A stretch of DNA of 64,000 nucleotides from positions 186,001 to 250,000 of the forward strand of contig NW_026782230.1 in assembly GCF_031769215.1 (NCBI RefSeq), in the 5' to 3' direction. The DNA is from Ylistrum balloti. Lineage: Eukaryota. The notes below the pieces were generated by a model. That model was not told where the DNA came from and did not search any database. It worked only from the letters and a program-made list of their open reading frames with translations. Position 1 is the stretch's first letter. Each line of letters begins with the position of its first letter. The position numbers and the translations under genes were made by a program. Shown one piece after another: positions 39-50,200 of the stretch.

Positions 39-1526
39 TTTACACGGACAACTATGTAAAAGGAGAATAAGACCAGGTGTTTCAGAAGTGAAAGCGTCTT
101 CTCTTCCTTTGACCAAACTACCATATAAACCTTGGTTAATATGGTAAACTTGGTAAGAAATGTCACGTTTCCAAATCAGAATAAGGTATACAACGGAACC
201 ACCAGGCTTACTTATGTCCAACTTCATATCACACAAGGTAAAAGAATATTTCCCAATAAGATCATTGTGACAACCATACCCCCCCTCTCCCATAATCTGT
301 ATCATTCCGTACCCTCGCATCCCTGTGCTTTGATGTGTTTATCTGACATTTGTGAGCATCTGACAGGGAAATCGTGATACTGAGAACAAGATATTTAAAA
401 TCGACATGTAAACACTATTAGTTGTGGAAACATAGTTAGTATATCAAATGTTGTTAGTGCCTCAGTCATTCTATTGAGAACGTCACATTGATTTGATTAG
501 TTTGTTCTCTTTATTTTCCCAGTGAAACACAATGGCATGTAAATCTACATTTTTTCTATTTTACCAACATCGTCAGAGCGTGGTTTGATTATAAAATATT
601 ATAGGCATGTAAATGTTCATATCATAATCATCATAATAGCTATCTGCTCGCTTTAACATTTCCCGACACAACAATCCCGTGTGTTGACTTTTCTGAGGAA
701 CTGATGTTATAGAGTTTATGTTGGCCGTTTTCGTCAGTAGTCTGATGTATTTACTTGTGTTATTGAATTTCGTGGAACTTTTCTTTGATTTCGTTAGTTT
801 GCAGTGCTAACATTCAAGAAATTATGCACCACGGGACTACGGGGAATATGCTATAATTCCTTTTGATAAAGGGTATTCGTGTAGACCCCTTTCATCCTCG
901 TGTCCGACCATATCCGTGGTAATGGCTACTTCTATTGTTGATCAAGACAAAGCTACAGCAAACAGGGAGAAAATTAATCTGTTGTAGAAGGAACCTGAAA
1001 CATGTATAAAATTCCAGTATATCGCCATACATAAACTATCCAGCGTGCGATTTACGCACGTGCTGTAAGTATACCGATAGGATGCACGTGCTGTGTATTA
1101 CCGTTATGATGTACCAATGTCATAGATCAGAAACAAAAGCGCGATGTTTGTGATTTGTGCCGTGGTAACTCCCCGGACATTCTGACATTTTGAGGAGATA
1201 TATGTCCGATGTGGGAGTTGAGAAGGCTCCCATTTCTACCGATCAATGTTTGCTGGCACCGAACCCATGGGTACAGTAACACACAATACGGAGGCCGGAT
1301 AATTAGAAGGTTTGGTCGAGCACTTGCCTATCTACCAGGCTTTCATCAATGAAGTCTGTGGCCGGTGATAAAATCCCGGTACACCGGCAGTGTTTATGTC
1401 GATCTGTTTCCATTGCTTCAAGTACACACCTATAAGTCCACCCAAATCAAAAATCTATAAAAGACACACGGGTGTAGACTACAAATCCAGCGTTATATTC
1501 GGTAGAGCCAAGCAATAAATTAAACT

Positions 1527-1615
1527 GCATCATACAGCTGTTTCGTCCTTCTAGGACTAGTCAGTGATGCTACATCATACAGTTGTTTCGTCCTTCTAGG
1601 ACTAGTCAGTGATGG
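1527..1615 (-). ncRNA. Tandem pair of minimal hammerhead motifs, both with core substitution CUGACUA (G8U)
   Basis: Minus strand 1570..1527 reads GCATCA CTGACTA GTCC TAGAA GGAC GAAA CAGCTG TA TGATGC. A second copy lies at 1615..1572 (stem III CAACTG). Same family as 22610. Confidence 0.75.
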
Positions 1616-2133
1616 TAAGGCCCTAAATTTCGAGGTTTAGGAAGCGACTTGGGTAAGAAAAGTACAACAAATCTAGTCAGTTTCGCTTATCCCACAAAGA
1701 TGATGTTGTTTAAAGGTGTGTTAAAGTATTGAGTAATTACTGACACCTTATTTTAATTTTTTCACCCCGCAGAGAAATGCTTTCAACTGAATAAGACCAC
1801 CGCAGTTTTGAAAGGTACTGATAATTTAATTTGACACATTTCAATATAACTTATTGTGGAAAGCCAAACCAGATTGTACATAAGCACTTTATCGGCAAAT
1901 TCATTTGTATTAAAGAAACAAAAAAAACTGACTTCGTGTACAGAAGTCTCTAACTTGATGGAAGGTCTATGATTTTAGTCAAGAGACGGGTGTACCCGGT
2001 AATTAAATTACAAGTGTCCCTTCCGTCAAACCCTTCCGGAGCAACAGACCACGCCTTATGTATGTTGAAGGGCTCATTTTTTTTTCTTTTGTTATGATTA
2101 TTCTCCGGCTCCTACTGTTTTCCATATTCACGT

Positions 2134-3790: not shown

Positions 3791-4026
3791 TTTGACACAA
3801 GAGAGAATTCTACATTAATCCTTCCCAATGCTTTCATTCAATGTACTCTTCGTTCAGATATAGCAATTAAAAGAGATGTATCTTGAGACATCAGTTAATA
3901 ATAGGATATTTTGCTGCTAAAACCAAAGATGTCTGTCGACTAACACGTGTTTATTGGCCAATGTTTGATACTATGTCATTGATATCAGGTTGCTCTTCTA
4001 TTTCTGAGAGGAAGAACTTATAACTA

Positions 4027-10980: not shown

Positions 10981-11271
10981 CTAACTGATTGAATTAATGG
11001 AGTTTGTAAACAGATCTGATAAACTACTGCTTGAGTGGTCCGATTCCATATGGCTACTGTGCAGTTCTGATAACGAGGGGGACGAGCTGATGTCAGACAT
11101 AGCTGGGGAGCCGCTGTCAGTCATCTCGGATAGCGATTGGTTCTCTTTGGATTTCTCATCCTCGGGACTGTCTCCTGCTTGACTTCCGCCCTGACTTCCG
11201 CCCCCGCCAGGTTTGTCGTCCTGTTTGAGTACGTTCCTTCTGTACTTAGCTCTAGCGTTCTGGAACCAGAC
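10981..11271 (-). CDS. Lhx2/9: Lhx2/9 coding exon 5 (recognition helix and Ser-rich C-terminus)
   Basis: Absent from the ORF track because it has no start codon; translated by hand. ATTCTACAG|GTC TGG TTC CAG gives VWFQNARAKYRRNVLKQDDKPGGGGSQGGSQAGDSPEDEKSKENQSLSEMTDSGSPAMSDISSSPSLSELHSSHMESDHSSSSLSDLFTNSINSIS, then TAG at 10983-10981. Confidence 0.96.
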   Translation of the reverse strand, partial: VWFQNARAKYRRNVLKQDDKPGGGGSQGGSQAGDSPEDEKSKENQSLSEMTDSGSPAMSDISSSPSLSELHSSHMESDHSSSSLSDLFTNSINSIS

Positions 11272-14200
11272 CTGTAGAATATGTTTAGAAAGAAGATTGT
11301 AAGAAAGGATGTTTATAAGACAGCATGCTCATTAGATATCATTGATTCTAAGTACACCTTGTAATCGACAACCAGAACAACATTCTTAAATGCATTTTAA
11401 AACGTATTTTAAAAAGTGAATGTCGATTGCTTCTTAAAGAAAGGTAACATGATACTGAGTTAAAATTGAGAGAAAGAAGAATCATGTTAGAACCCTCTTC
11501 AGCACGTGTATATTAATTAGAACGTCGATTGGTTGCACGTGCTCTAATGGATGCACCCGCATACGTTTTGGCGCACGCGCACCTCATTGAAGATGGGGGA
11601 ATGCGACAGCAGGTGCGCTGATCGTGGCGTTAGGCCCTTAAAGCAAAACTATCATTAACGGTCCACAGAGACTCTGAATTCTCCAGGAATGTTCAGTTCC
11701 AGACATCTCCTGATCCTCGATCGATAAAGTTTCTAAGAAATATATCAACTGGATGGGTCTATCGAAAAGGCGGTCGTAAGTCGGAGCACACTAAGTTTGG
11801 CCAATAGGCGGTCGTAAGGCAGAGCACACTAACTTAGTGTGACCAATAGATTCATGATTCAAATTTTATTCAAAACTTAAGGACATTGGCCCCTCAGCTC
11901 AGCACAACAACACAACAAATAGAGAATAATTCTCTTTTATATGAAACAATACGTATGATTCTCAGTTTGTTGCTTCCCAAATAAATTTCCTTAACGCACA
12001 TAATTCGTTAATGTTCTGGATATCTAACAACTGACTAGCCTTAAAAACGAGAGGGGGTTGGGTTCAAACAATATCTCACTTTTAGGTTTTGAAATTTACT
12101 AGAGATTAATCCAAAATTACATTCATCTTCTACATTAAGGGAGTTACATTGTTTGACAACGCTTTTTTCTGTCGGCATATTTCTGTATCTCCTTTACTCT
12201 GTAGTCAGTGACTATGAAGGTGGTCATAAGCCAGAGTACAACAACTTAGTGCGGCCAGTGGGCGGTCAGAAGTAAGATGTTACTAACTTAGTATATCGAA
12301 TGGGCGGTCGAAAGTCAGCTTTCATTAGTCCAGCAGAAAGAATTTGTCTCGACTGTGATGTCACAAGATAAAAAGCCTATTAACAAGCCACGTTAATAAA
12401 AGATAACAATATTCAAGTTTTACTGTATATATTTAAATTCTTTGTAGAGTAAATGTTCTCTGCACTTGTGCCTAACTTGGTCTCGATGTTTTACTTTGAT
12501 GCCCCCCCCCCCTCCCCACCCCCTTTCTTATTTTCCTTTCTGGTCGACGCTATTGTTTTATTTGTATTGTTTTGAAACAGCAGTTGGTTGGTATTACAAG
12601 TGCTTTTCATATCAATCTGCGTGATGTTAAATGTAATAAAACTAACCACACAAGCGTACCGGATGGTAGCGATATTTTGGTGGCGGCTTATGCGGGACAG
12701 CAGGGGGTATGTGCTGTGTCTATAAGATGAATTAACTCGTACCTTTGTGTTGACAGTACACTAAGGTATAACATTCGAATACTGTTAAACAATACACTAG
12801 TTTCAAATTCACACCTTCAATTTTGCTTTAAACTTGAAAACATCTTTAAGAAAACACTAAAAGACATGGAAAATCTTAGTTTAAATTCGCGTAAAAGGCT
12901 TAGATCGTGTCAATGCTTGGAACCGAGATATCTTCAAATATTTGATTATCTTATGAGATCCCTGTCGACCAAACACTCATGTTGGCTGGTCTTTGTGTGT
13001 CGGTGATATTCCGCCCACACCAGCCATCATCATGTCAGCTTCGGATCGACACAGGTGTCCAGGCCTGAGGTATCGCTTTCAGAAGTGCTATTTATACGGC
13101 AGTACTGTATTCCTTTTTCCCATGCAGAATATCAACACCTTCATAGGCATGAATCTTCATGGTTTACTTTACCGCCCATGTGCCCTTGTCAATAATGCAT
13201 ACGAAATTTCAAGTTCAGTCAACTTTGTGGCTGTTTTAAAGGACACTTGGAAAAACCACCCTTGGCTAAACATTACAGTATACAAAGTTCCTACCTGTAG
13301 TACGCGTTTGGAGAGACCCGTTTTCTGCGCTAACTGCTTGAGGTCTTTGGCATCCGGGTTATGATTCAGTCCGAAGTACGACTTCATCGTCCTTAACTGA
13401 TGATGTTTAAACGACGTCCGCACTCTTTTCTGTCGCGGAGGTGGATGTGTCCCGTAACCATCTTGCCGCATCATGTCTCCTCCGCGTTCGTGTCCATCTC
13501 CAGGAACCAACCCTGCAACAGCACGGAACGTTTTAATTTTAAATAGAAAAAAGTTAAATAACAGTTCATATATACATGCGCAACTAAACACGGGACACTT
13601 TTATCGTTAGCGCGAATCTTTCTTTAAAAAATAAAGCTTTCAAACGTGTGACCTTTCTTACAAATTTTTGTTCTCAATATGTGAACAATTTTTTAACAAA
13701 AAAAAACTGCACTTTATCGGGAATAATTTTGAAATATATATATTCTTCCTTTTCAACCAATATCAGTTTTATATTCACTGACAAACCATGCGATAACGTC
13801 TTTCCAGTTAGTGATGAGAGAAATGCGTTAATGTGGGCTCGGCTTGTTTATATTGTATACGTTATTTGTCCATCATTTTCAACAACTTGCATAGACTATC
13901 GATGGTTTCCAATCGTAAAATCAACACAAGTACTACAAAGACGGTCTAGTTAAGATGAAACGTGGACTGACATTGGACCGGAGATTGTTTAGTCACAGAG
14001 CGTGGTATTCAATGAATGATAATATACTCCTGCTTTCATGTTCAAAACTATTCCATGTTATCTTTACGGCAGACGAAGAAACAATGGCGTGTGGAGTAAA
14101 CAACCTGCCTACCCCATCAGTACTGGCAGGGAAAATCCAGCAGACCAGGGCAGCATTTACACTCGATTTAAAAACCGTCTTCATTGCAGTGATAGAATCA

Positions 14201-17200
14201 GGTATTTTTTTGGTTTTCACGCTCTTATTCCTAAACGCCTGTGATATTTTGGCTTGAACATGACTGTATTCAATACCCCTCCCTCCTCACAATAAGAAAA
14301 TTAGTATCATTACAGAGCTCCCAGTTAAAACATCCGTAAGTACGACCCAAAATGGTTGTTATAATGCTACAGAATATCTAAAGGATGATTACAAGTCCTC
14401 AGATGTTAAGATAAATTTGGTACAATCACACCACATTGGTAAGTCTTCGGGCGTTCGTAATTTTATGCCACAAAATGCTTTGTTACAACACCTCTAACAT
14501 TTCATTGAGGTTCTCGGGTACAAGGGTTAAGCTGAGTACTGTTTAGATAATGAAATTCGTTACATTTCCATAACACTTGAAAGTAGTACTTCGAAATACG
14601 AAGAATAATATAGACCAACGCCACCTCACAAGGGGGCGTGTCCACATACTCTTTAGGTGTATTGTGCCATTCGTTGTGAAGGTTTAGTCTGGTACAACAT
14701 ACGAACACTACTCAGTAATATATCTGTACTCCTGAAAGGGTTGGATGAGAACATCGTTTTTGTTTACTTATCAACATGTTGATTTCACTGGTACTATTAA
14801 CGGAAGGAAAATTCTTGTATTGATTTGTTTTATGGATTTATTATCTATCAAGGTTTTGTTTGTTCATAATGTCAAAATATAGATATTTTTCTCTTAAACC
14901 ACTATTCCAGCATATAAACTTTATATTTATCATAGTTTTAGCTTTGTTCATGCTAATAGAAATTATTATTTATCTTTTTATAATTAAAGATATAATATTA
15001 CCTACATTTCAATTTTCCTATATTAATATCTTTTCATGACGTCATTAGATGTATTTACGTGTTTATTGAGTATGTTAAAATATGTTTCTGTTTACAATGT
15101 TTCAATGATAATTTTTACAAAATCAACATGTTACAATACATTGACAGCATTATATAGATAATCACACGTATAGGTATATATTTGTTATAACACTTTCGCA
15201 CGTCAATCAATTTAATATATTTTAGTATATCTATTTTAACAATGTTTTATCCTTTTTCTGCCAGTAGACACCTATTTGGTATTTGTGTTTCAATAGATTG
15301 GCTAACAGTATGACGATTTATCATGTTTTTCTATATTTTTATGTTCAGTGTATATCAATGTATTATATCTTAGTATTTATCGGTTCAATACTATGTTAAT
15401 ATCTATTTTAGTACATCTTCATTGCTTTACCTCATTTAAGTTATGTCTGCTAGGAAGATATCGTTTTACACAATATCAATATATAATGTAATAAAGAGAA
15501 ATGATTATTCTACATTTACGATTACTGTAGTCTGTAGTGATTCAGTCATAACATATAGACCATATTTATTAATTATTATGAACGATAAAGATATAAATTA
15601 CTTTGACGTCCAAAGTAACAAAACTGATACACAGGTGCTTTTTTCCTGTAAGATCTGATCAAGTCAGCAGAATACGTTACAAGTATTTTTATTTGTCAGG
15701 CTAGAAAACCTGGTAAACATTATTGGTTTGATGGCGGATTCAGTAACGCTAATTATGTGAGAAAATGCTTCGAATTACTCAATGGACGCGGACGTGTTCA
15801 GATACTTTTTTTCTAATGTTGGAAAATGGTGTGAAATTTACTGTAAATGTTGAGGTAAAGCTTACAATGATATATGTCTTGAGTCTGGATCCTATGTATT
15901 GACTATCATGGTAGTGATGTGGTAAACAGCGTGATAGATATTACCCAGGCCTTTCTCTACATACCAAATACACGGCACTCTCCCCGATCAACACGCCACA
16001 TAAATCAACCTTACCTCCTGCATCAAACCCAATTAATAACAGACCAGCCCTCGTCAACTTCTATAGTATCATATAAACTAATAGTGGTCAAGATTTATCG
16101 AAAAGTTTGTGATCTTATGTGCCTGCTCTGTAACTTCAAAATTAATACTATGACAACAGTTCCATAACATTATGTTAGTAGTGTATGCAAATAGAGGCTT
16201 GTCCTGGTTATTGTACTAGATTACCAAATATCCTAGATTAGTATTTTCTGACATGAAAATATTTGACTCATAGCTTCATATATGCGTTCTTGAACAGACA
16301 AACAGTATCTTCGACAATAATGTATCTAGCTGTTTTGAAAAGTTAATTTGTTTATTCAATTAAACTTCTGTGACATTTTTGCACAATTTTGTATATTTCA
16401 TAGCTCCCCATGTCTTTTTAGAACGCAGACAATATACTGTCTTATGGTACTCATCAGCATCCCATTCCTTTCATTCTATATCTATGTGTACTTCTGCCGA
16501 GGCAAAGTTATCCCAGGTGCAAATATGTCCTATTTTTGTGGGCATTTTTTGTTCATTCATTGTGAATCCAATTCTTCATCAATCAGCGCCTTCATCTCCC
16601 TCTCCACTTCACCTACGTTACATTGACAGAAGCATGTAGGCTTTACAGGCCGCTCCGCACGATTTGGCACCCTCCGCATCACGACCGTAAATCCGTCGTC
16701 CCCATCTCGCGGCTCCCCCCTCCCCAGTACATGGTTATTTATGCGAGTCTCGATATCGTCTTGATAACGGCAATCTGTATCAGAGAAGAGCGCACCTGTT
16801 GTCGCTTTTCTGTCATCTGCCAGTTCAACTTCCGCTGAAGTCATCTAGGAAGTTATGACTTTGGTTACAACGACAAATCGGTTTCACTTCCGATCTTACG
16901 AGTTACGAGGGGAGGAGGGAAGGGTAATGGGGAGCATGTGCATGAAGTTTGTCGCTGACAAATTCATGGACTGACAGTTTCATCGACTCTGGGGTGTAAA
17001 ATATCTTGACATGACATTTTGACTTTTCAGCGTAGTTCGACTCCTTTTCAAACACATATCTTGCTATAACCTTACGTGTTATTTTCGGAACATATTCAAA
17101 TATTGACAACAATCTATCTCATTATTAGAGTCATATAATTGAATAGGACCGCACTAAAATGCAATACAAACTCTTCTTGGCATTAAAACAATACATGTCA

Positions 17201-35200: not shown

Positions 35201-38200
35201 AAAGGTAGCCAATTTTTGTACGTAAACTGAGCCCTCTGTACGTTGACAAGTTAATCTGGGTATTTTATATGTACATACATTCCTAAAACAAAAACACTTG
35301 CTATTGACTATCGGAGCCGGCGTTTGACTATGCGTCGGCCTACATCTTAATGCTCCGTCTTAATCTACAACTAAAATAACGTTTTCATCGTTACTTACGT
35401 CAAATGTGAACAGATAAGATTTAGTGTACTTAATTTAAGATATCTATCACAGACGAATGATTAGGGAATCGATATATATTATCACTTGAAATGATATTTA
35501 ACCAGTCAAGATCTTTGTGGATTAAACAGCATTTAGTTGGGGAAAATCTGATGACACCTTCTGACTACCAATCAAAACGTGTTTTGAAATAACATGGCAG
35601 TTATTTTTATTTTATACATAATTTTCCGATTGTATCAGCTCCGCTGGATCATGTAATTCAAAACACGTTTCGTATCATATGACGATAAGTCGGGCCCAGA
35701 TAAAATCTCTTCATTGAAATCTCGGCCTCCTTTTACACTGATAGCGTCGAAGATTTCTGTCTTCGTGGTAAGATTAGTTTGTTTATTTAATCAAATCATA
35801 TTTTTTTCTATCCTGGCGTATATAATAGTGATAACAGTCTTTGCCACCTAATAGTTTTATATGTACAGTTCTGTCATCGTGTCTATTCGATCACCTACAC
35901 ACTGTGTAAATTGATGAAACACATACGGACACTTATATATTATAATCATATTATGTTATCCCCTGTTAGTGTTATTGATGACTGGACGATATCCTTCATA
36001 AAATTATTCTGGTAGACATTACATAGCAATCAATACTTGAATCCATTATGATCCGACATATCATTAATAGTAATTGTAGCAGTGGATTTTATTTCAGCTA
36101 AATTCCTATAGGAAAAATGAACTATTTGACACTTATAGATATCTTAAAACGGCTGTCCATATCGTGTTAAATATCATAACATAACACGAGGAGAGTCAGG
36201 CGAGTGCTGTGGAAATACTGCAGTGTTAATTAAGCGTGTGCCGGTCTGATTTGGCGCGAGGAATGCCGGACTTATCAGGCTCCCTCTCCAGCCGACTCAG
36301 CAGGCTTGAACAAGGCCTTGATAAACCAGGGTGACAAACGAATCACAGAGTACAGAGATGCTAAAACGTTCAGGGGCCAATGTCCGTGAAATGGAGGAAC
36401 AAAATTAGCCAAAAGAAGACATAATATCCAGATTATTATACCAGAAATTATTTCCAAATGACACAAATTCACATTGAGCCACATTTTGTGTTTGTAAAGA
36501 ATATGATTTTCTATCATCAGAAAAATATCTCCGTTTAATTCCTTTATCAATTTTTAATATGAAAATGTTCTTAATGGCACAATTCTTTTACCATTGCAGA
36601 GTCACAGAAACGACAAGTATAGAATAGGAATCTCTATACATGGAAGGTCGTTTCTTTTACCATCAATTCCCTCACAGCACCTTATAGCAACATTTTAATC
36701 TGTGGTTTGAATTAATTTTTTCTGCAAACTAAATACTAGAAATCTGTCAAAATTACTATACAATTATGCAAATCTAACGATTTACTATAACTAAGTCGTA
36801 CTGTATGCCTATTTATAGCATTAGAATACTGCAATGAGAACTCGAGGGTTTTTTTAGCAATTGCAAACACATTGATTTTTCTTAAATATTTTCAATGAAG
36901 AGTTCACAACATATGCTCTTTTCATCGATTCTGAGCAAATAGAAGCGTAGTTCCTGCCATGAAAAAAAACTATACATTTGTAATTGAATACTATTTTTGT
37001 ATAAATCGAATCCCAAGAGAAATGACGATGTGAACCGCCTGCCAGTCGAGTGTAACTACTTCAGATGGTATCAATAGAGCTCCATACAATATTTATAAAT
37101 CCTATTTGTTTTAACGATAGGAAATGGAAAGGACAACACCCTTTCGTTGGCCTAGCAAATATTTACCGTGGTCAATGTAAAGATTCGACGGATACCAGAC
37201 CAAATCCGAACAAATACCCTACAGCAATTGCACCATATTGACTCAGTAATTATCACCATCTCGCTCCTCTGGTGCTAAACGCTACGATGCAGTTCCGTCA
37301 CAAAATGCCCGTGAATATTAATATCTCTTAATTTGCATTGAATTAACATATGCGCCTATTCAGAAATTCAATTACTGTTAATTTTGTAACCTTTACTCGA
37401 TTGAAATTTCATTATTTCCAATTATGTTTTTGAATTTGGTGTTTTTATGATACTGGTGGATGGCGGTTATACCAACACAGTGCATAAATGATAAAAACCA
37501 AATAGGCTGAGAGATCACAAAATTGCCTGGAAATAATACAACACTCAAAGGAAGGAAGTGAAGTGCATTCACGATGTTGAGTGAAAAAATCAGGGTTATG
37601 AACAGAAAAGGAAGAGACTGAATCTAATGCGAATGAACCTCTCCAAGTCCGAAGGTCTACGAACCCTCCAGATGCCGATGTGGCCAATTTTAATGAAGTG
37701 TATGATCACGTGGCTGGCGTATGAATGAAGTGAAGTGATGCGACTCACCCATGCCTGGAGGACACCCTTCTCCATCCGCGATAGGATTCTTTCTCTTCCT
37801 AGGTCGTCCCTTTTGTACCGTTCCGACACCATTGTAGTAAGGGAAATGCCCCCCAGACGAACACGGGAGTCCTGGAGTCATTCCGTGAAAAAATTCGCCT
37901 TGGAACAATAGTTCATAATCCGTTCTGCAATAAACTAAATTTTCTTTCATTCCGAATTGGTCTCCCGTAGTAAGAGTTTTATTGCATGCCATACATGTGA
38001 AACACGTGATGTGATAGACCCAGTCCCGTGCTCGCATCACTAGTTCATTAGCAGATATTCCTAACTGACACCTTGCACACCTTTTCACAGCAAATCTTCT
38101 GAAATAAATAAAAAAAAATATGTAAGCATATTTCAACCTTACTGCAAACGCATTAGTGTATGAAGAATAATATATGTTATCCGTTTTGTTGATCATATTT

Positions 38201-41200
38201 CATAAATGACACCATTTCTGTCGTAAAATTTTTCTGGGACAACAGATAATGGATTCACACAACTGGTTATAATGTATCGGATCATAGTGTATTTATCAAT
38301 TTACAAACATGATATGCTTGACATTAATGAAGAGAATATGATTGAATCGCTGACAGCATCTTTTTTATTTATTTTACAACAATTTCAAAATGTTTTTGAT
38401 TAAGTTACATTGAGTGCTTTAGTCTCTTGCGGTGTCATTTTTAAAGGCCGGCTGAGTACGAAGGTTCTTAATACTGTGCAAAGAAACTAACCAGGGATTC
38501 GAACCGTGATCGCCTAGGTGAGGGGCGTTACCATTTTTTATGGATAGGATATCTAATAAAAAGTGTTGAATATCAGGAAGAGTGAAATCACTTATAATAT
38601 CACAAGGACTGACGATTTTGAGAGTTAAGTATTTTCATACAGAACATTTTTATATGAAATAATTTTTGCTGAAACATTTTGAACTGATTCAAACTAGTTT
38701 GTCCGCAAGGGATACGTTTACTCTGTCATTTATAAAAGTCTATAACATACATCTACATCAAAATAGAACAATTCACTTAGTTTTGTTGAAATAATAGATT
38801 TTATGGTATTCTCTGATATCACACGACGTTGTGAGAAGTATGAACAGGGAGTGTGATAACGACAAACACATGACGGAATCCTATAGCTTTGATGAACCAG
38901 CAAAAGTCAATCTAAAACACCAATGGGTTAGTAGGAGAACTATTTCAAATCTTTATCACGTAATGTTATATATAGTGGGAATGGAGATCAAACGAATAAG
39001 AGGCAGTATTGATATGTTAATAGTTGCCATGATGGATTAATCTGTAGTGCAGAAGGAGTAAAAAGTGTTGCGTCCAACATTTAGACTGATTGCAGCCATA
39101 ATCGCCGCCCAATGTGAATATGTGGACTCTTTGTAATGCTAGGATTTCAAACCTAGTAAAGAGCTTAATATATGTAGGTAACGATGTTTTAATATGAATT
39201 TGCATATGACAGAAGTTTACATGAAGGATATCAAGAGGAAAAAAATCATAAAACAGAAAAACGGAAATGCGTTGAAAATATAAAATCAAAAGTCAAACGC
39301 ACGTGTGGAAAAAATGACTGTCTGGATCCAGTTAAAGTTGTAAGAGTGAGGACTACCAACCACAGACCTCACCAACATGTGTTTACCCTCAAAAACAACA
39401 AAAGAGACAAGGGAGCAACAGAAACTAACAAAATGGCCAAAAGATTCATATTCTTATAGGTTTTCTCGTTCCGGATCAAACAAAACATATTTCAGTCCTG
39501 CCCCTGTTGAAGGCTGGGTACACGGCCCCTCCGTGTACAAACCCTCCAAAACAGGAATTAGGGGTTCAAAGACACACGCGCGCTCTGCCAGATGCATATA
39601 CCCAGAGAGAGCCAGATGTCTTTAGCCAGTGATCTGGGAGCATTGTACGCATGCCTTGGTCTCAATCTAAGGCTGCACCTGCAAACAATGGATAATCTAT
39701 AGGATATAGAACTTAAGAGTACAATTATACAGGGAAAAAAATTCAGATCGGAGGTACGGTTTTGTGCTAATGCCGAATCCAAGTTACGAGAAAGCAACAC
39801 ACAAGTGTCTTTAAATAAACAAATGGTCAATGATTTCGGGCCATCGCTCCTAAAATATCAGATAATTTACAGTGACATTCATAATCTGTCGTCCTAATGT
39901 CACTATTGTTACCGTGTGATAAAATTTTAGAAAACGGTTGTTGCCATAGAAACATGACAGTAGAGCACGTGACATGCGATAACTAAATAGGACGATTTTA
40001 TTCTGTTTATTGAATATTTGGAAATTAAAAGGGAAATTCTGATTAAACATTAGGGAAGGATATTTTCAATAGAAGTGTGACGACAAATAAAACGTTTAAA
40101 TATCTTACAACGTTTTACATATTGACATACAAAATCCTCCAATATGCAAGATCTACAGATATAAAAGGGATGATATTGTGAGCTGTATGTTTGATATGAT
40201 AACTCCTTCTTTTCAGTTATGCAATCAAAATTTCATATTAATGCTTCAAAATAATTGAAATATTCAAATTAAAAGAAGAAATTATATTTTATTTGCGTCA
40301 TTGGAAACATCGAATATATTTGTGTCAATTACAAAATATTTTACGGAAATAAAATATTGCTGTATAAAGCTTACTGTACTTATGTATCTGGTAGTTTGAA
40401 TGGCCCTAAGACGGGTAAATAGTGATGAATTACCTTATCACGCGAGGCGCGGGATATAAACACTGTTGATTACAATCCAAATACGGATCCTTTGCTGGTT
40501 ACAATACATTGTTAATGCATTACATCGGGACGTACAGCTAATATTTACCAAGGAGTTTGGTCAATATTGGTTTAGCAACCAAAAAATCGCAGGTGCCCAT
40601 CTCATAACGGATTCAAACTCTCAGACAAAATCAAGCACTTCATTCACTGTATTACACAGACGATATATCGACTTTCATAGCTCAAAAGAAATCAAACATT
40701 TTATCCAAAATTCATTACTACCGTGTCCAATATTATCGAGCTGTTTCTGTGGTTAATTAATGGTGTGTGTGTAATTTTAAATGTAATATTTCCGATATAT
40801 CTGTGAAAATTTCCTGTGTACATAATCCCGTGTGTGTAAAATCTCAGGCTCTATCCGATATGTGGGCCTGGTATACAGGTGTTTACAGGAATGTTTACAA
40901 TAATATATACAGTGGAAATACAACACACTATTGATACAAACACACATTCATAAACAATTCTTGTCCTATAAAATAATCGAAAAGGCCTACCCAAATATTC
41001 TAGGGGTATTTGACCAAACCAAGACAGGGTTTCTGAATGGCCTTTTTTGTATTATAAGACGAGAAGGGATTCCAAAATCCCATAATTACTCATCATAGTA
41101 TAAGTGGCACAACCAAAGGGGCATTCAGTACTAATTTGATATACTTGTGGAAAGTACCTTTTCATACAAATTTAGAGTTAGATACAGTACAGACAAACAA

Positions 41201-44200
41201 TGAATAAAACTGCATCATACAGCTGTTTCGTCCTTTTAAGTATATTCTTGAAATTCTGTACATGTAATATTTTGTACAATCTTCAACACTGAAGGTGGTT
41301 AGATCCCGAGGTCTGCCGTAACCTGCATGCTACGTTTCACTCCATGTACTTGACCTTTTTCTAAAATTATTCGATATATAAAAATCAATCAAATGATTGA
41401 AATCAAATTATTAATCGTTTTACGGTTAATAATGACATGTATTGTAATCAAAGATTATTAATCAAAACTCACAGAAAATAGATTAAACACGGAGTTATGT
41501 TTCCCTCCAATTGCTATTTTGCTATTTCTTAAACATTACATTCCTTATGGGGATGGCGACGTACCGATTAGACTTATACCAAGGTATGCATCCGGAATAA
41601 AGAGAGAATAAAAAAATATACACATGAACATCAACAAAGTAATCTATGTATTTCATTTCGAACAATTCCTGGCACAGCAGGATTCCGGATAGCTACAATC
41701 CGACCTACCGGAACGTATTAGAATGGACCACCATTACAATGTTTACACATCGTCATATAACTTAATTCGGGATACGCTCAGTGTTAAATAAACGTTATAA
41801 TACGGAATGATTAAGCTTTTATAATTTTGACACAAGAGGTTAAAAGGATTACTGTAGGTCAATCCCTAACATCTTGTCGCCAAATAGCTGGCCTTTTGTA
41901 TCGAAGATCACGCCTATAATTATACGCATAATGCAGTCTTTACAGTTTCTGAAAGCAAACCAAACGCAATGAACTTAACTTTATAATTCCGAGTTAGGGG
42001 ATAAGAGCATTTTAAATTTCATAGTTGTGGCACTTGAATTGCACTTTTTTCTATAACAAATTACATTTAAAATGAATATTATTTTCTGTGTATTTTATAC
42101 AGTTTTTAGTTCGTTTCAGAATTTTTAATTGATTTGGGTACAATTTCCATTACATCTTGGACAGGTTACCTCAGTACAGTCTTTGATAGAAGATTAGAAC
42201 ACAACTAAACAGGATTTGTCAAAGATTGGTCGACCATATCGAAATATGACGTAATATTGTGGTAAGAACCTTCACAGCGGAATAATTAAAGATTTCATTT
42301 GATTATGATATATAACGGGTTTTGTTACAAGAATCTTATAAAAATGTACATCATAGCTTGAATTTTATGGAGAATCTTTCAATCAGATTTTATATTTTAT
42401 TCCTGTAAAATTGATTTCTGGCAAAGAAATGTATCAACATTACAAGCAACGCCTAGATATTATATTGATATTATATGCAAATTAACATTTTTAATCTAGT
42501 TTAAATTTTCTGAGTAAATTGGCACGATGACCACGTTTGTTATCGACCCACTAACGATAATTAGGGATGTATTTTGGTGTGTTTGTGCCTTGGTGTCTAG
42601 GTATAACCATATTCCATTCTTAAAGTTTAATTCTGGCATGTCGTATTTTAAATATTTCATCAACCAAAATGATTGAGATTTTCTTCAAAGCCTCGACACA
42701 AACATGTTAATAAGCATAAAATTATAACTCGGTTTGCTTCCGAACGTACTCTTGTTCACATTGCTATAACTAGATCACGACAGCCTGGTAGCACTTTTAA
42801 TCGGACTGGTTGGCAGTAACATAATTTGCATACGTTGTACGATCTAGCACCATCCTCAACATATTCCACCTTTCATGACGAAGAATAAACACAGATTGAA
42901 TTTTGGTCTAGAAGTTTGTACACGCCGCAACAACAAACTGAATGAGAGAAGAGGGTCGTTAGGCCAGGAGTATCAAAGAGGGCGAAACAATGAAAGAATT
43001 GGATATTGAAAGGCTGGCTAAATTAACGGCCACGCCCCCTCCTTGTGTTGTCAAGATTCCGTCGACTAGCCGTTTGATTAGACTCCTGTCATACGCGTGT
43101 CTTCTAGGGGCTTAATATTCGCAAAACAAGCGTGCACATGCATGTGCGTTCTCTTCCATGTACCGCCATGGTCGAGTGCCGACAATTCCAATTTACTTAG
43201 CGTAGAACATGCGGTATGCCTCCTGGATGTAACAATGCTATCTAAATGCATGGAAAAACATGTTGTATATTAATTATCGGGTAAGACACATCCGTCTGTC
43301 TCAAAATACGTCGTTAACATTATTTTTTATTTTACGCGCGCCATTTAAATGTTTCCCGTCTGATTTCAGTATAACGGTATATCATCTGGTTTTTTTGATA
43401 GAATATTTCATTAACATCATAATAATGTGTCGAGCGAAAATGGGGATGCTCATAAATGCTGTGGGTATTTATCACAGTGATGCTATATCACAAAGTTAAA
43501 CTCCAAAAGGTTCTACAGTTAAACGAAATAGTTGAAGCAGTACACAACTAAGTTTTCATTGATACCTGTCAATCATCGAGAGACAAACGAGTTAAACACA
43601 CAAATTATATCTGATATCCATAAATATTTCATGAAGTATTTTGATAATAAATAGAACAGAAAAATAATCTAGAAACGTTTTCCTTCTTGCAGAATTAAGA
43701 AAAAAACATCGGACACGCATTGACACAGCGTCACCGGCATGTATCGCCAAGAAAGTTTTGGAAATCAGCGAAAAACGAATCATCATATTTCAGAAAGCAC
43801 CGAACTCCCTCCCCAAGCATTGATGACTACTGGCTGGTAAATCAATTTTCTGGAGTTCATACAAGTGCATAGCCCCGATAGAATTCTCTTACCAACTGTC
43901 ATTTTCCGAACTTTGAATTCATGCGAAGGAAAATCAAGTTCGCTCTGACGTTTCCTGTAGCCCAAGCCGTGCTTTTCTTGCCCCGAGACGATTTGAACCA
44001 ATGACAGCCTGCCTCCTGTGTCAATAAAACCGCGAATGTTTCGGAATCTCGCACCTGGACCCCAGTTTTAGACAAAAATAGTGCTGTCTGCTTTGTTTCT
44101 ATCGTTGTTGGTTTGTATTTCCGAGAAGGAATACCATATTCGAACTATCTTCATATTTCTAAAACAAATTCATTATATTTGTAATAATAAAGATCATTGG

Positions 44201-47200
44201 AAGAGAAAACATGTAGTTTTGATTTGGGTAAGTGTGGCAATGCTAAGTAGACCATGCTCCCCCAAACTCTCTCCTGATCACTTTTTCAGAGATAATAGAA
44301 AGCTTATAGGGAATGTTTCCAGGCGGGACACTCGCAATAGGTGGTCTGTAGAAGAAAAGAGCGGGAAACATGTTGTGGAGTCCGTGTGTCTTACGCATGT
44401 TTAGGATTCCCTGAAGTGAAGAAAGATGCGATGACGGTAAATTACACGTCGAGACAGACCTCCTAAATGTTGATGCAAAAAATGTCAACACCAACGTGAA
44501 AGCACGACTTGGATAACACCACAATGTTTGCAGGAGTAGTACTGATTGTCTCCAACCTTACACAAGCACCATGTATTATGATGGTAATGCTAACTCAAGC
44601 GTAGTTATGAAAACACGTGTTTTTGCTGTACCTGAATTCATCGTCTTGTTTGTTTTTTTAAATTCTGTTTAAGATAACTTTTCACATTGTGTCACTGCAA
44701 ATACCGTTGATAAATGATAATTATGTGAAGGCATACGATTTTCACGTTAGCATTGAAACGAGTTTTGGTCTTCACTATAGAGTTTCATCGTTGTTTTCAA
44801 TGTAAAGTTCACGATTCAACTCTGTCCTAAAAGAGGACTGAAAGTGAAAACCGCTCAAGAGTAACAATTTTTAACCTTTACAGTTTTCCACGCCAATTTC
44901 TTTATTCTTATTTAATTTAAGGAACCATTAAAACACTTTTTGTTTTGCTTTTCAAAAACGCTAGATCAAGACGTACTTTTTAAAATATTTTTTCTCTTTA
45001 AAATAAACTTCCGATAACATATCAATGGCGTTCAATTAATATTGCGAAATGTTTTGTTCACTAGATACAAATTGCATCTAGCTTATCGGTTACTTTGTTC
45101 TGCATAGTTAGCGTTTTGATATAATTATTTTGTTCTGTTTCATTTACAACAAATGTATTTTTTACCAAAGTCCTGGAAATTAAATTTTGATGTGAATTCA
45201 AATATAGTATTTCGGTATGTTTAAAGCTAGTTACGATGACGCTGTGGAAATAATTCGGTAGAATTTTAAACACATTTTAAAATACATCTTTAACATTCAA
45301 CATCTTCAATTCTAAAGAGAAACATATTTAATGTTCACCAAAAACTTTCTTCAAAACATTTTTTTAATTAGAAAAGATACAATGTTTATGTGTGTTATCA
45401 AAAAAAAGGGAAGATTTTTCATATCTTCTATCGATACAATATTATCTGATTCATCATCTAGATTCAACATGGACAAAAATAAAGTTCTACCAGTCAGCTG
45501 TCATGTTGATGTAATAAACAAATCGAATTATTTTTCTGACAAGTTTACAACATATTTATAGACAAAAATGATGTATATAAATTAATATCACTACGGAAAA
45601 CGATATACGATGCAGGATATCGGCACACAGCAAATAAAATATATTTTATGTGTCCGCGATATTACAACAAACATCAAACTGAATGTATTTACATTTTGTG
45701 TATCTGAAAAAAAAACAGAGATATTATTTCCGAAATTGTGCTGAAATGACAAACACTTTTATTATGCACAATAACACATTTATTACATTTACCAAAAAAA
45801 AAAAAATAAAACTCAATTATATGCACCAATAAAATTGTATACGCACAAACTGCGTACCAGTTTTACAGTCGGCAAACAGACGGGTAGTATTTACATCAGT
45901 GTCAACAATGACCAAATATTACCGACCACCTGTACGAAGGTCTCAACAGCTATCATATGCTTATCCTCAAGTACACTATCACCTACCAAGAAATGGGCCA
46001 TAGAAAATCAGTCAGGCGAGCCTTATGAAATTATAGCCCTTAAATACACATTATCCTGTTTCCATTGATTTCCCAGTGTGCCCCGTGTCTTTCAGTGAGG
46101 CAGGTTTTTCGTCTGTTCGGGATTCGATTCTTTATAGAAAAATAACCACATTTATACTGAATTCAATATTACCTAGTTTTACTTTAGTATGTTGACTAGT
46201 GTGAATAGGCAGCAATGTTTCATTTTTTAATTTTAAAAAATTCTGATGTTAAGCACTGAATTTTAAAGAAATATATAGTGTAGCATAATATGCATAAAAT
46301 TGTAGCTAAAATCCTACATGATATAAATTCTGAGAGACGGAAATATAAAATTTGCGTTGTAACTTCGAATTTTCGCTGTCAAATTTGATTTCAGTTGAAA
46401 TATTTATTTACGGTTGAAACATCTATCGCTTTAAAAATATCATACGCAAATAATATCATTAAAAATATTCTCCAGAGAAATGTAACATTTTATCATACCC
46501 GTGAAAATATAGACGATATTCCGTTCAATAAATGCTAAATATCCACAGGTCACCTAATGTCGTCTAGATTTGCGGTAGTTATGGAAACGAAACGGAAAAA
46601 TGAATTCTAAAACAACGTGGTTTTATCGAGAAAAGTTTCATTCTCTCATTAAGATATAGTTGTTGTAATTGATTTCAAAATCGATATCATAAAGATGCGT
46701 GTGTAGTATTTTCAATATTGACAAATTATGTCTGTAAATTTCCTGCGGAAATATAATGATGACGTGTTCCTTGATGGCGACCCCACATTAACAACATCCC
46801 TCCCGGTAATCGTTCATCCATACTCCCAGGATATTGAACCATAATCGGACAAAACAATCCGGAAATAGACTCTCCGTAGACCGGTCCTTTGATACTTGAG
46901 TTAATTTTTTTTTATACTTCAAAATTGATATACAAACAGGTCTGTAGAAACACGTCTTTACTTGGTGATTTTAACCTAATCTTAAATATGTAACCGGATT
47001 TTCTTTATAAGTTATCCACACTCAACAAGTGGAGACATTTTATAGGATATGTAGAACTATTTAAATGCTAGATTTTGTTTCCAAACGCAGATTAACGTGT
47101 TTCAAAATGAAAAAAAAAATTTTGTCACATTATTTTGATAATAGCTACTCTACTATTTTAAAGTTACAATTGATAATTTATGAAAAGTTGTAGAAATTAG

Positions 47201-50200
47201 TTACATATTAATTCTAGTTACCTACTGTACACTATAAAATTAGTAACTCTGTCTCTTTTAAAAGTTACGATTCATGTTTATATATTAATTTCAATTACTT
47301 CCTGTACATTGTAATATTCTGCAAGAATTTACAAAAGACACACAAGTGAAGCACACCTTTTAATACAGAGTTAGATACAGTAGGGCCAAACAATGAATTA
47401 AACTGCATCACCGAGTAGTTTTCGTTCATCAAGGACTCGTCAGTGATGCTAAGGGCCTAATTTTTTGAAGCCTGGGAGATGACTGAGGAAATAATAAGTG
47501 TTTAAAATAAAAGTGAAAATCCGGAATGGGAGGTGAACTTATAATATCATATTGACGAGTAAATTAATTCCTTCTATTGTCTCTCAGTTAAGTCGTATAT
47601 AATGTTTTTCTTTTCTTACAATGTAAGATAAGTTTGGTATTGTGATATTTGCAATTTTGTAACAGTGATAAAGTTAAAAAAAAATGTAATAAAATTTTGA
47701 AATATTTTAGTATAAGCCACCTTCGCAGAATTTAAACATTACCATTACTGTATTTTTTTTTGTTACTTGCATACCTGAAAGTTTCTATGTTTAGATGGAG
47801 AGATGATTGGTGGAGACGCAATTCTAGACGATTTAAATGTGTTTATCATACAACGTGTCTCTCTTCATGATAGAAATAGAATCAAATTACTTATCTATCA
47901 TCAACTTCATGACTTTTAAAAATTAATTAAATGTCATATGTTTATTGATATACAAAGGAATAGGCGGCCGTTTTGTACAAAAATTTGTCCTTCACTACAG
48001 AGAAAAACGCCATCTTCAATGTAAGTGTTAAATCAGTGAAAACATCTCTGTTTAAGGTATGTGTCTAGATTCTCATTGTCTACGAATACGGAAATTAACA
48101 TAAAAGACATGCGACTTATTATCTGTAATTCAACAAGGAAAATAAAAGTATAAAATTTCAGTTTGAACTGTTCAGATTCCAACCTGTTACGCCATCAATT
48201 ATTTTTAATTACAAACTAATTAATTTCATTATGGTCCGGAATTTTTGGATTCTTTGAGCGGGTAAGGTTACTGGTAGTGATTTACGGACACGGAGAATTC
48301 ATTATGTTGAACAGCAGTGCCAAGGTATAACATTATCAAAGTTACCCTGGTCCTGAAATCTGAAATACAGTATATACAACACAAAAAATCATACATTCAA
48401 CCATTCAACAACTCACAACAGAGTCTAATTAATGCCTTCCCAAGCACAGAATGCAAACCCGATAATGACGCAATAGAGAGGAAGACAATGTAAGTTACGA
48501 CACAGGTAAAACTTTGATGATGATCAAGTCAGCATTACTCTTTATAAATTTCATTCTATCGATCTAATCCTGCATAAAACGTCATATTTGATGCTTTTAT
48601 CACCAGGACCATACTCCAATACTTCTTTATAACTGAGGGACTTTTTAAAAAAATTCTTTCCATTTTTTAATGTCCTTGATTTTGATTATCGACTCTTCAT
48701 ATCCTGTTTCAAATAGGTTCATAAATATTTAACTGTTTTAATTGATGTTTTGTTAATTGGTGTTTGAGGGTACAGCCCTTTATAATATCTCTAAAAGTTA
48801 TGTGGTTCTGTTTTTGCGGGAGTGTAGTATTCACGACGGCAGTAATGAGTGGAGAGCATGCCTTTTAGTGACCAGACCGGACTGAACGTTTTAGTTCAAA
48901 AGTATTGGTTGTTTTAAGGTAGTCACTGATACCGAAGTTGTGACATCGTACCGTTCTACAAAATACCATCGGCTAAAATGTAGTGAGATTAGACAGCAAC
49001 TTCTAGGGGGGGGGGGGGGGGGGGGGTATGCGGTTTTAGATAATTTAACATCTCATCTATTGATATTTTAAAGTGTTATGAAACATAAAATAGCGGATTT
49101 ATTTGTCACTGTCCAAGTTGGAACACCAAACGGAGTACACCAATTATTTGCCATGTCGATGTCCAGCTACCATTTTGTCCTCTACCTTCCCTCTAGAGCA
49201 TCTAGCCCGGTTACTAAGCCATAGTTACTCCCGATTTGTAAATAATGATCATACAAGAATGCCTAAAATGATAATGCTTTTCTCACTGATGTTGGTAAGT
49301 TTAGTCTATTCGGTAATGGATTAATGTTTGGTATACATTACTGACTTAACATGGCTGCGCTCATAATTTCCAGTTGTAAAGAAGTGAATTTAGAGTTGGA
49401 TGAAGATACACAAATTGTATTCGGTTGACTAAGAAGGGATTTGGTTTGATATCTATGTAGAATTGTGAGTTTCTTCAACGACCGTTGTTGATGTAATGAG
49501 TTTTCACCAACTACATTTAACGTCATTACCTCATTAGCATGTTTGTACAACGTGAAAATTGTTTCCATGCCACTGAAAATATCTAAGAATTGGGACAGAA
49601 AGTATAATCTGGAAGATGTTGATAATTGTTATTAGTTTAGAAATTGTCTGGTATATTGTATTTACATGTAAAAACATCAAAGATCTACCAGTAGAGCTAC
49701 CTGTGATGTACTTACCTGTCATAAAATGTAAGATCTACCTGTGATGTACTCACCTGTACTAAAATGTAAGATCTACCTGTGATGTACTTACCTGTAATCA
49801 AATGCAAACACTACCTGTGATGTACTTACCTGTAATCAAATGCAAACTCTACCTGTGATGTACTTACCTGTAATCAAATGCAAACACTACCTGTGATGTA
49901 CTTACCTGTAATCAAATGCAAACACTACCTGTGATGTACTTACCTGTAATCAAATGCAAACTCTACCTGTGATGTACTTACCTGTAATCAAATGCAAACA
50001 CTACCTGTGATGTACTTACCTGTAATCAAATGCAAACTCTACCTGTGATGTACTCACCTGTAATCAAATGCAAACTCTACCTGTGATGTACTTACCTGTA
50101 ATCAAATGCAAACACTACCTGTGATGTACTTACCTGTAATCAAATGCAAACTCTACCTGTGATGAACTTACCTGTAATAATCTTCTTTACAGTAAATATT

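What the first reader, a model, noticed from the sequence alone, without database searches (positions are those of the whole stretch)
1490..47465. Dispersed hammerhead-carrying mini-element family with an orientation bias
Seen: five copies at four loci (1527, 1572, 22610, 41212, 47405) sharing ~100 bp including flanks. The two copies in pre-mRNA sense within intron 2 are disabled (one truncated before CUGANGA, one lacking the cleavage triplet). The sense pair downstream of the gene has G8U. The only intact core is antisense. Inference: the family is very abundant if this density is typical, and selection may remove or inactivate self-cleaving copies that would cut host pre-mRNA. The sample is small, so this is a hypothesis. 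The family may be an undescribed non-autonomous ribozyme retroelement.
Basis: partly seen in the sequence, partly recalled or inferred. Interest (0 to 1): 0.75.

Follow-up and report, generated by a model that had tools for sequence, protein, structure and literature searches.

The report
Hammerhead-carrying retrozyme-like repeat, ordinary decay
The five hammerhead-ribozyme copies are real members of a roughly 390-base mobile repeat present thousands of times in this animal genome, a kind already described (retrozymes linked to Penelope-like elements), and one intact copy among five matches ordinary decay, not selection by orientation.

Summary
A type I hammerhead sits at 22610-22653(+), above Rfam's threshold. 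Related copies lie on the minus strand: a tandem pair with G8U at 1527-1615, a truncated copy at 41212 and a degenerate copy at 47405.

The family is a non-coding unit of about 391 nt: about 270 nt of 5' region, then one to more than 50 hammerheads of 45 nt, then a tail of about 100 nt. It has a fixed 3' end, graded 5' truncation, partial tandems and copies longer than one unit. The genome holds 3,484 exact intact cores and at least 5,000 tails (about 8,700 estimated).

This matches published non-LTR retrozymes and hammerhead elements associated with Penelope-like elements (PLEs), for example mussel repeats of 350-390 bp. It is not the terminal repeat of any PLE copy I could inspect.

The orientation hypothesis is not supported. 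Only 13 of 52 sampled copies (25%) are intact whatever their position. Fisher's test on the window gives p = 0.2-0.25. The lesions are of different, ordinary kinds. Single copies are predicted not to fold as active ribozymes. A genome-wide test needs gene annotation, which I did not have.

Earlier notes of this scan describe the same family many times elsewhere in this genome.

The parts
22392..22729 (+). Nearly full-length element copy with internal deletions, antisense to the host gene. It has about 30 nt of upstream tail end, the 5' region, one hammerhead and the tail.
   Evidence: Alignment to genome copies, blast census, own-genome matches.
22610..22653 (+). Intact type I hammerhead. Helix I is 6 bp and helix II 4 bp. 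Helix III is 2 bp with the palindromic loop AGCU. The cleavage triplet is GUA, with predicted cleavage after 22647.
   Evidence: Rfam RF00163 at 36.7 bits, above the gathering score of 34. The core is intact in my classification. The lowest-energy fold of the single copy is not the hammerhead fold.
1452..1675 (-). 5'-truncated element copy with two hammerhead units and the tail. It lies about 9.4 kb downstream of the gene's stop codon, on the gene's strand.
   Evidence: Tandem Repeats Finder gives period 45 and 1.9 copies.
1527..1615 (-). Head-to-tail hammerhead pair (1527-1570 and 1572-1615). Both units carry G8U (CUGACUA), so this is one mutation followed by a duplication or conversion at the DNA level.
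   Evidence: Sequence. Sub-threshold Rfam match across the junction. G8U is sporadic genome-wide: 38 matches against 3,484.
41128..41245 (-). 5'-truncated copy with the tail and the 3' half of the hammerhead (41212-41238). It is sense in the intron between the two LIM exons.
41262..41405 (+). Inverted fragment of the same element (tail end plus the first ~140 nt of the 5' region), abutting the truncated copy head-to-head.
   Evidence: Blast to element units, alignment. This layout matches the inverted 5'-truncated copies described for Penelope-like elements (PMC8557442).
47305..47560 (-). 5'-truncated copy with about 110 nt of 5' region, a degenerate hammerhead at 47405-47449 and the tail. It is sense in the same intron. 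A private cluster of changes replaces helix III and the cleavage triplet and creates a 10-bp hairpin over the core.
   Evidence: Fold z-score -4.7. The variant is unique in the genome.
10984..50416 (-). Context only: the host LIM-homeobox gene (Lhx2/9-like). LIM exons lie within 50171-50416 and 37693-38199. Homeodomain exons lie at about 13.3-13.5 kb and within 10984-11328.
   Evidence: Pfam LIM at E = 8.8e-16 and 6.7e-18, Homeodomain at E = 2.9e-4. Motif scans.

Best explanation
The five copies are decayed insertions of one non-autonomous, non-coding retroelement family. The unit is about 391 nt: roughly 270 nt of 5' region, then one or more 45-nt canonical type I hammerheads, then a tail of about 100 nt. 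It is of the animal 'non-LTR retrozyme' kind.

Proposed life cycle:
1. Tandem or partly tandem source copies are transcribed.
2. Neighbouring hammerheads pair through their self-complementary ACAGCUGU segment into a double hammerhead and cut after GUA.
3. Unit-length RNA is probably circularised by a host ligase.
4. The reverse transcriptase/endonuclease of a resident Penelope-like element (PLE) starts cDNA at a fixed internal site (...UGUACAAUCUU) and copies a variable length.
5. This yields 5'-truncated, inverted or longer-than-unit insertions.

After insertion the copies decay neutrally, and about three quarters of them now have a dead core.

Shown here: the anatomy, the copy numbers, the absence of an ORF, the fixed 3' end with variable 5' ends, the presence of PLEs, and the predicted dimer fold. 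Inferred: transcription, cleavage, circularisation and mobilisation by PLEs.

The pattern in the window (one intact antisense copy, the sense copies dead) is what this decay gives by chance.
For: - Hammerhead identity: Rfam match above threshold.
- Abundance: 3,484 exact intact cores against 0 in the control. The tail 20-mer with up to 3 mismatches matches 5,109 times against 66 in the control. In my sample 30 of 52 copies pass that filter, which gives about 8,700 copies.
- Anatomy: a sharp common 3' end and graded 5' ends. Copies of 409-612 nt exceed one unit, with the tail running straight into the 5' region.
- Arrays: runs of 3 to about 55 hammerheads always sit between the 5' region and the tail.
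- Non-coding: the longest open frame is 68 aa or less, and G+C is 34-39%. There is no tRNA-, 5S- or 7SL-like head.
- PLEs are present: ORFs with RVT_1 and GIY-YIG domains, including 755-aa open frames in 5.36-kb tandems. They carry their own, different minimal hammerheads downstream of the endonuclease domain.
- Fold: a tandem pair folds as a double hammerhead with an 8-bp helix III. The single copy's lowest-energy fold pairs core bases instead.
- Decay: 13 of 52 copies are intact (7 of 28 primary hits, 6 of 24 incidental). Divergence is 11.3% in the core, 9.6-9.7% in the helices, 12.8% in the loops and 15.9% in the tail.
- Literature: mussel retrozyme repeats of 350-390 bp, about 5,000 hammerheads, circular RNAs, PLEs proposed as mobilisers (PMC7229834); partial tandems, inverted truncated copies and 30-40-bp tails as PLE signatures (PMC8557442); internal initiation by a PLE reverse transcriptase (PMC11167929).
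Against: - No RNA evidence. The only runs available were contigs whose RNA status is a guess, and their unique flanks had zero depth, so low-coverage DNA cannot be excluded.
- No target-site duplications were detectable: 0 of 30 copies beat the shuffled-position control.
- No autonomous PLE sharing this element's tail or hammerhead was found in 30 GIY-YIG loci plus 4 extended loci, so the mobiliser is inferred from co-occurrence and insertion style only.
- Most copies are solo and 5'-truncated, unlike the head-to-tail unit arrays typical of published retrozymes.
- Inserted ends do not coincide with the ribozyme cleavage site, so the insertions themselves give no direct sign that cleavage shaped the template.
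Confidence: 0.78

Rival explanations
1. One reading: intact self-cleaving copies are removed or inactivated by selection when they lie in the sense strand of introns, because they would cut host pre-mRNA. This would give an orientation bias of intact cores.
For: In the window the only intact core is antisense, and the intronic sense copies are dead. Retrozymes are reported to be depleted from introns and exons in Xenopus (bioRxiv 10.64898/2026.07.22.740005, read).
Against: - Numbers: 0 of 4 against 1 of 1 gives Fisher p = 0.2. Counting the pair as one event, 0 of 3 against 1 of 1 gives p = 0.25.
- The base rate of intact cores is 25% whatever the position. Three independent dead copies then have probability 0.42.
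- The lesions are of different kinds. One is a truncation and inversion made at insertion. One G8U was later duplicated. The pair is not in an intron at all.
- Core sites are not more diverged than helices, loops or tail.
- A single copy has a 2-bp helix III and is predicted to misfold. The literature says such monomers cleave poorly (PMC4209133).
- Unverified scan notes list about 8 intact or near-intact sense-intronic copies and about 6 antisense ones elsewhere in this genome.
Confidence: 0.07
2. The copies are simply 3' ends or pseudo-LTR fragments of an autonomous Penelope-like element (PLE), not a separate non-autonomous family.
For: - PLE-style insertion features: partial tandems, an inverted truncated copy, and a ~30-nt extra piece of tail in front of two full-length copies.
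- PLEs are present in the genome.
- Family copies cluster near some degenerate PLE fragments.
Against: - Copies longer than one unit run from the tail straight into the 270-nt 5' region and on to the next hammerhead, with no ORF between.
- Two 98%-identical PLE copies lose homology 185 nt after their stop codon, and the mini-element lies at different distances beyond that point.
- The PLEs' own hammerheads have long helix II, no loop 3 and a different sequence.
- Blast of the unit against 30 GIY-YIG loci found only independent mini-element copies.
Confidence: 0.08
3. The family spreads at the DNA level, as a satellite or minisatellite seeded around the genome or as a MITE-like element. The hammerhead would be a passive passenger with no RNA-mediated copying.
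For: - No target-site duplications were found, and there is no RNA evidence.
- The 45-nt arrays behave like ordinary minisatellites. Dead G8U units are multiplied locally. The same 64-kb window holds at least 8 unrelated minisatellites with periods of 26-43 nt.
Against: - Thousands of dispersed solo copies share one sharp 3' end and have graded 5' truncation. This is the signature of copying from a 3' start site, not of DNA transposition or unequal exchange.
- There are no terminal inverted repeats.
- The closest described relatives are expressed and are thought to be retrotransposed (PMC7229834).
Confidence: 0.05

Closest known systems
Animal non-LTR retrozymes (Cervera & de la Pena 2020, PMC7229834), especially the Mytilus galloprovincialis repeats of 350-390 bp
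   Same: - Non-coding unit of about 391 nt with low G+C (34-39%).
- One canonical type I hammerhead: helix I of 6 bp, helix II of 4 bp, and a short helix III with a palindromic loop.
- Thousands of copies.
- Autonomous Penelope-like elements with a different minimal hammerhead in the same genome.
- Partial head-to-tail tandems.
   Different: - Here most copies are solo and 5'-truncated, with a fixed 3' end about 100 nt downstream of the ribozyme. They are not arrays of whole units.
- The 45-nt ribozyme itself is multiplied inside the element, from 1 to about 55 units.
- No expression or circular-RNA evidence could be obtained.
Minimal hammerheads in the pseudo-LTRs of Penelope-like elements (Cervera & de la Pena 2014, PMC4209133; Craig et al. 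2021, PMC8557442)
   Same: - Type I topology and a palindromic helix III that implies action as a dimer.
- Massive dispersal as solo truncated copies.
- Partial tandems, inverted truncated copies, and a short extra 'tail' piece.
   Different: - This element has no RT/GIY-YIG ORF between its repeats.
- Its hammerhead is the canonical form, not the minimal form with a long helix II.
- It shares no sequence with the PLE 3' regions I could inspect.
Newt satellite 2 and the Schistosoma Sm-alpha hammerhead repeats (cited in PMC4209133; details from my own knowledge)
   Same: Repeats of a few hundred bp in animal genomes, each carrying a type I hammerhead with a weak helix III that works best as a dimer.
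   Different: Those are long satellite arrays (newt) or a SINE-like element (Sm-alpha). No sequence relation was tested. No pol III-type head was found here.

Membership tests
Hammerhead ribozyme, type I (Rfam RF00163) | Score at or above the family's gathering threshold, with the CUGANGA and GAAA boxes and helices I-III | tested here: met
   22610-22653(+) scores 36.7 bits against a threshold of 34. The other four window copies fail: two have G8U, one is truncated, and one lacks U16.1 and the cleavage nucleotide H17.
Hammerhead ribozyme, type I (Rfam RF00163) | Self-cleavage at the NUH triplet | not testable with these tools
   Folding only. The single copy's lowest-energy fold is not the active one, and a tandem pair folds as a double hammerhead. 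Laid contigs cannot show RNA ends.
Animal non-LTR retrozyme | Non-coding unit of about 170-400 nt with low G+C carrying a type I hammerhead | tested here: met
   Unit of 391 nt, G+C 0.34-0.39, longest open frame 68 aa or less. Hammerhead.
Animal non-LTR retrozyme | Head-to-tail tandem organisation of whole units | tested here: inconclusive
   Partial tandems and copies longer than one unit exist (L008 612 nt, L017 468 nt, L003 409 nt). Most of about 30 sampled copies are solo and 5'-truncated.
Animal non-LTR retrozyme | [quoted passage not shown] | tested here: inconclusive
   Runs X1, X4 and X6 hold the hammerhead region, but they are contigs, their RNA status is a guess, and the unique flanks have zero depth.
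Penelope-like element (autonomous) or its pseudo-LTR | Repeats flank an ORF with a reverse transcriptase and a GIY-YIG endonuclease | tested here: not met
   Between successive hammerheads there are only about 350 non-coding nt. Of the GIY-YIG loci checked (30, four of them re-read over about 8 kb), none carries the element as a regular terminal repeat.
Penelope-like element (autonomous) or its pseudo-LTR | Insertion style: partial tandems, inverted 5'-truncated copy, 30-40-bp tail extension | tested here: met
   Partial tandems. Inverted fragment at window 41262-41405 against 41128-41245. About 30 nt of tail end precedes the unit in L003 and in window 22392-22729. This shows a like mechanism, not membership.
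Retrotransposed element (target-primed) | Target-site duplications flanking insertions | tested here: not met
   0 of 30 copies had a flank match better than random positions at p <= 0.05. The copies are old and their boundaries fuzzy, and target-site duplications of Penelope-like elements are often not discernible (PMC8557442).
SINE | Head derived from tRNA, 5S or 7SL with a pol III promoter | tested here: not met
   ARAGORN found no tRNA in 6 loci. An Rfam E-value scan of 6 loci found only hammerhead matches.

The most novel reading that the evidence does not exclude
A real but modest orientation-dependent filter exists. Among young copies, especially tandem pairs that can form the active double hammerhead, intact cores would be under-represented on the sense strand of introns relative to antisense and intergenic sites. 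This would show that genomic hammerheads cut host pre-mRNA often enough to be selected against.
Probability: 0.08. Interest if true: 0.6.

Novelty: new member of a known kind. Interest (0 to 1): 0.22.

Why it matters
As it stands, this is routine repeat annotation. It shows that hammerhead hits in introns of this genome are passengers of one abundant retrozyme-like repeat and need no gene-level explanation.

It would matter only if a properly powered, annotated, age-stratified test showed orientation-specific loss of intact ribozymes. That would be the first population-scale evidence that dispersed hammerheads are active on host transcripts in vivo.

The family is also a clean system for asking how Penelope-type reverse transcription starts at an internal site on a tandem or circular template.

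Tried and rejected
- Strand-composition proxy for transcription direction. AT and GC skew along the window show no consistent sign across the 40-kb gene, so it could not stand in for gene annotation.
- Genome-wide orientation test. I could not sample more copies or fetch whole Penelope-like element (PLE) units.
- PLE partner. I blasted the unit against 30 GIY-YIG loci and 4 extended loci. The only hits were independent mini-element copies. Two 98%-identical PLE copies end their homology before the mini-element.
- Target-site duplications: none above control.
- SINE head: none.
- G8U as a dead-on-arrival subfamily: rejected. There are 38 matches against 3,484, scattered over about 28 loci.
- The 47405 variant as a subfamily: rejected. 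It is unique in the genome.
- RNA evidence. The look-up of sequencing runs gave only contig-level runs of guessed RNA type. Laying them showed the hammerhead region and 45-nt 'goes back' joints but nothing about strand, ends or transcription. This gives no verdict.
- Literature search with 'scallop' returned hammerhead-shark papers.
- Conservation of the hammerhead in the old 22610 copy as a sign of local function. With about 10% private divergence, the chance of one change or fewer in 44 nt is about 0.06, and the copy was picked after the fact. I did not pursue it.
Full report
**Observation**

Rfam at gathering thresholds finds one family in the window: a type I hammerhead at 22610-22653(+), 36.7 bits against a threshold of 34, E = 1.4e-5. 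Reading the four stated places and aligning them confirms the other copies, all on the minus strand.
- 1527-1570 and 1572-1615 form a head-to-tail pair. Both units read CUGACUA, that is G8U.
- 41212-41238 keeps only the 3' half of the ribozyme.
- 47405-47449 keeps the CUGACGA box but has lost helix III, U16.1 and the cleavage nucleotide.

At relaxed thresholds the pair is seen as a sub-threshold type III match across the junction of the two units. The window has no N.

**Host gene**

Motif scans and Pfam place two LIM domains at 50171-50416(-) and 37693-38199(-). The first homeodomain exon lies at about 13.3-13.5 kb(-) and the last exon within 10984-11328(-).
- 41212 and 47405 are sense in the intron between the LIM exons.
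- 22610 is antisense in the next intron.
- The pair lies about 9.4 kb beyond the stop codon.

**What the family is**

A 181-nt query around 22610 gave 2,885 first-look candidates in the window's own 648.5-Mb genome. Orienting and aligning 30 loci shows:
- a sharp common 3' end (...TGTACAATCTT, within a few nt);
- graded 5' ends;
- in several loci, a tail that runs straight into a further conserved stretch leading to the next hammerhead.

The unit is about 391 nt: about 270 nt of 5' region, a 45-nt hammerhead and about 100 nt of tail. Insert lengths range from 130 to 612 nt with one hammerhead. Four copies exceed one unit, so the template was longer than a unit or circular.

The unit has no open frame above 68 aa and 34-39% G+C. 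It has no tRNA-like or other Rfam-recognisable head.

The hammerhead number varies. Arrays of 3 to about 55 units with a 45-nt period always lie between the 5' region and the tail.

Whole-genome pattern counts:
- 3,484 exact intact cores, against 0 for the reversed control;
- 5,109 tails within 3 mismatches, against 66 in the control.

In my sample 30 of 52 copies pass that tail filter. This gives about 8,700 copies, or about 13 per Mb. The window, with four loci in 64 kb, is about five times denser than average (Poisson p about 0.01).

**Window census**

Blast of element units against the window gives the full extents listed under parts.
- The 22610 copy is a nearly full-length unit with internal deletions, preceded by about 30 nt of tail end.
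- An inverted fragment (tail end plus about 140 nt of 5' region) lies at 41262-41405(+), head-to-head with the truncated copy at 41128-41245(-).

That layout, a 3' piece in one orientation and an upstream piece inverted with a gap between, is the kind of scar made during insertion. It matches the inverted 5'-truncated copies described for Penelope-like elements (PMC8557442). The 'truncation before CUGANGA' was thus most likely present from the moment of insertion and is not a later disabling.

**Ribozyme architecture**

The motif has a 6-bp helix I, a 4-bp helix II and a 2-bp helix III closed by the palindromic loop AGCU. This is exactly the 'canonical' metazoan type I form, described as unstable as a monomer and active as a dimer (PMC4209133). 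Folding agrees:
- The single 22610 copy's lowest-energy structure pairs core bases C3-G5 with loop 3.
- An intact tandem pair from an array folds into the double hammerhead with an 8-bp ACAGCUGU/ACAGCUGU helix III.

A solo intronic copy is therefore a poor candidate for cutting pre-mRNA.

**Relation to Penelope-like elements (PLEs)**

A GIY-YIG search of the genome found 51 matches. They include 755-aa open frames arranged in 5.36-kb tandems. One of these frames carries RVT_1 and GIY-YIG domains, so autonomous PLEs are present.

Downstream of their endonuclease domains they carry their own hammerheads, of the minimal PLE type: long helix II, six-base palindromic helix III and a different sequence.

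Blast of the mini-element against these 30 loci, four of them re-read over about 8 kb, found only independent mini-element insertions. Two 98%-identical PLE copies lose homology 185 nt after the stop codon, and the mini-element lies at different distances beyond that point.

**The orientation hypothesis**

I classified 52 tail-adjacent hammerheads from all loci in hand. 'Intact' meant all eleven invariant core positions, H17, no indel, the G10.1-C11.1 pair, at least 3 of 4 pairs in helix II and at least 4 of 6 in helix I.

Thirteen copies (25%) are intact: 7 of 28 among the loci retrieved by the query and 6 of 24 among incidental copies. Against that base rate:
- One intact copy among the window's four loci is the expectation.
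- Three independent dead sense loci have probability 0.42.
- Fisher's test gives p = 0.2 for 0 of 4 against 1 of 1, and p = 0.25 for 0 of 3 against 1 of 1.

Per-site divergence is 11.3% in the core, 9.6-9.7% in the helices, 12.8% in the loops and 15.9% in the tail. Cores are not preferentially hit.

The three sense lesions have unrelated origins:
- An insertion-time truncation and inversion.
- A single G8U substitution shared by both units of the pair, hence multiplied as DNA. G8U is a sporadic variant with 38 genome matches at about 28 loci, several of them multiplied locally.
- A private cluster of changes found nowhere else in the genome. It turns helix I into a 10-bp hairpin over the core.

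The pair is not in an intron.

Scan notes, which I did not verify and which are biased by what readers chose to report, list about eight intact or near-intact sense-intronic copies and about six antisense ones elsewhere in this genome. This gives no hint of a strong bias.

A proper test needs gene annotation and all copies. I could not run it. A strand-skew proxy failed.

**RNA**

The only runs offered were contig-level and of guessed type. Laid on one element with unique flanks, they hold the hammerhead region and many 45-nt 'goes back' joints, which reflect arrays. They have zero depth on the unique flanks and cannot show strand or ends. This gives no verdict on transcription or cleavage.

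**Comparison with what is known**

The closest description is the animal non-LTR retrozyme (PMC7229834). That paper reports non-coding repeats of 170-400 nt with type I hammerheads. In a mussel the repeats are 350-390 bp, with about 5,000 hammerheads and abundant circular RNA, and PLEs are proposed as mobilisers.

A 2026 preprint derives such elements from PLE pseudo-LTRs and reports their depletion from introns in Xenopus (10.64898/2026.07.22.740005). It contains no orientation analysis.

The fixed internal start of copying fits the internal initiation shown for a PLE reverse transcriptase (PMC11167929).

The differences here are the dominance of solo 5'-truncated copies and the multiplication of the 45-nt ribozyme inside the element. 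The multiplication looks like ordinary minisatellite growth: the same window holds at least eight unrelated minisatellites with periods of 26-43 nt, and dead units are multiplied too.

**Verdict**

The family is a new member of a known kind. The selection and orientation reading is unsupported and, from this window, untestable. Earlier notes of this scan had already met the same family many times on other pieces of this genome. They call the organism a scallop, which I did not test.

Noticed in passing
window 47405-47449 (-): A private cluster of about five substitutions plus a 1-nt insertion replaces helix III and the cleavage site. It makes the 3' arm complementary to helix I plus the CUGA box, giving a 10-bp hairpin (fold z-score -4.7). 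The variant is unique in the genome. It may be a quasi-palindrome templated mutation.
   Followed up: partly
window 2132-3656, 6351-7028, 7736-9974, 25102-26828, 49697-50178, 51979-52364, 59978-62140: At least eight unrelated minisatellites (periods 26-43 nt, 10-62 copies) lie in one 64-kb window around a developmental gene. The genome seems very prone to minisatellite growth. The weak Rfam MIR4371 hit at 6826-6976 is one of these arrays.
   Followed up: no
G000 C422:240415-261997 (loci L042-L045, L059) and C129 (L036, L037): Penelope-like elements with 755-aa open RT/GIY-YIG frames, in head-to-tail tandems of 5.36 kb. They look young, and their own minimal hammerhead lies about 1.4 kb downstream of the endonuclease domain.
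   Followed up: partly
L003:1579-1640 as laid (run X7): In the probable source-species DNA run, summed contig word depth over the hammerhead is about 1.5 million, against about 9-15 on the unique flanks. This is no copy number, but it hints that 45-nt hammerhead arrays are far more abundant in reads than in the assembly. Runs under two other organism labels also hold near-identical hammerhead contigs.
   Followed up: no
L061 (C643:62500-70500), L063 (C879:50000-58500), L064 (C526:193000-201500): Two to four copies of the mini-element lie within 8 kb around degenerate Penelope fragments. This is much denser than the genome average. It may reflect repeat-rich neighbourhoods or a shared target preference.
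   Followed up: partly
L061:2640-2723 (-): A tail-only copy whose homology begins within about 3 nt of the predicted hammerhead cleavage site. It is a single case. A tail-anchored sample would show whether such 5' ends are over-represented, as expected if cleaved linear RNA is sometimes the template.
   Followed up: no
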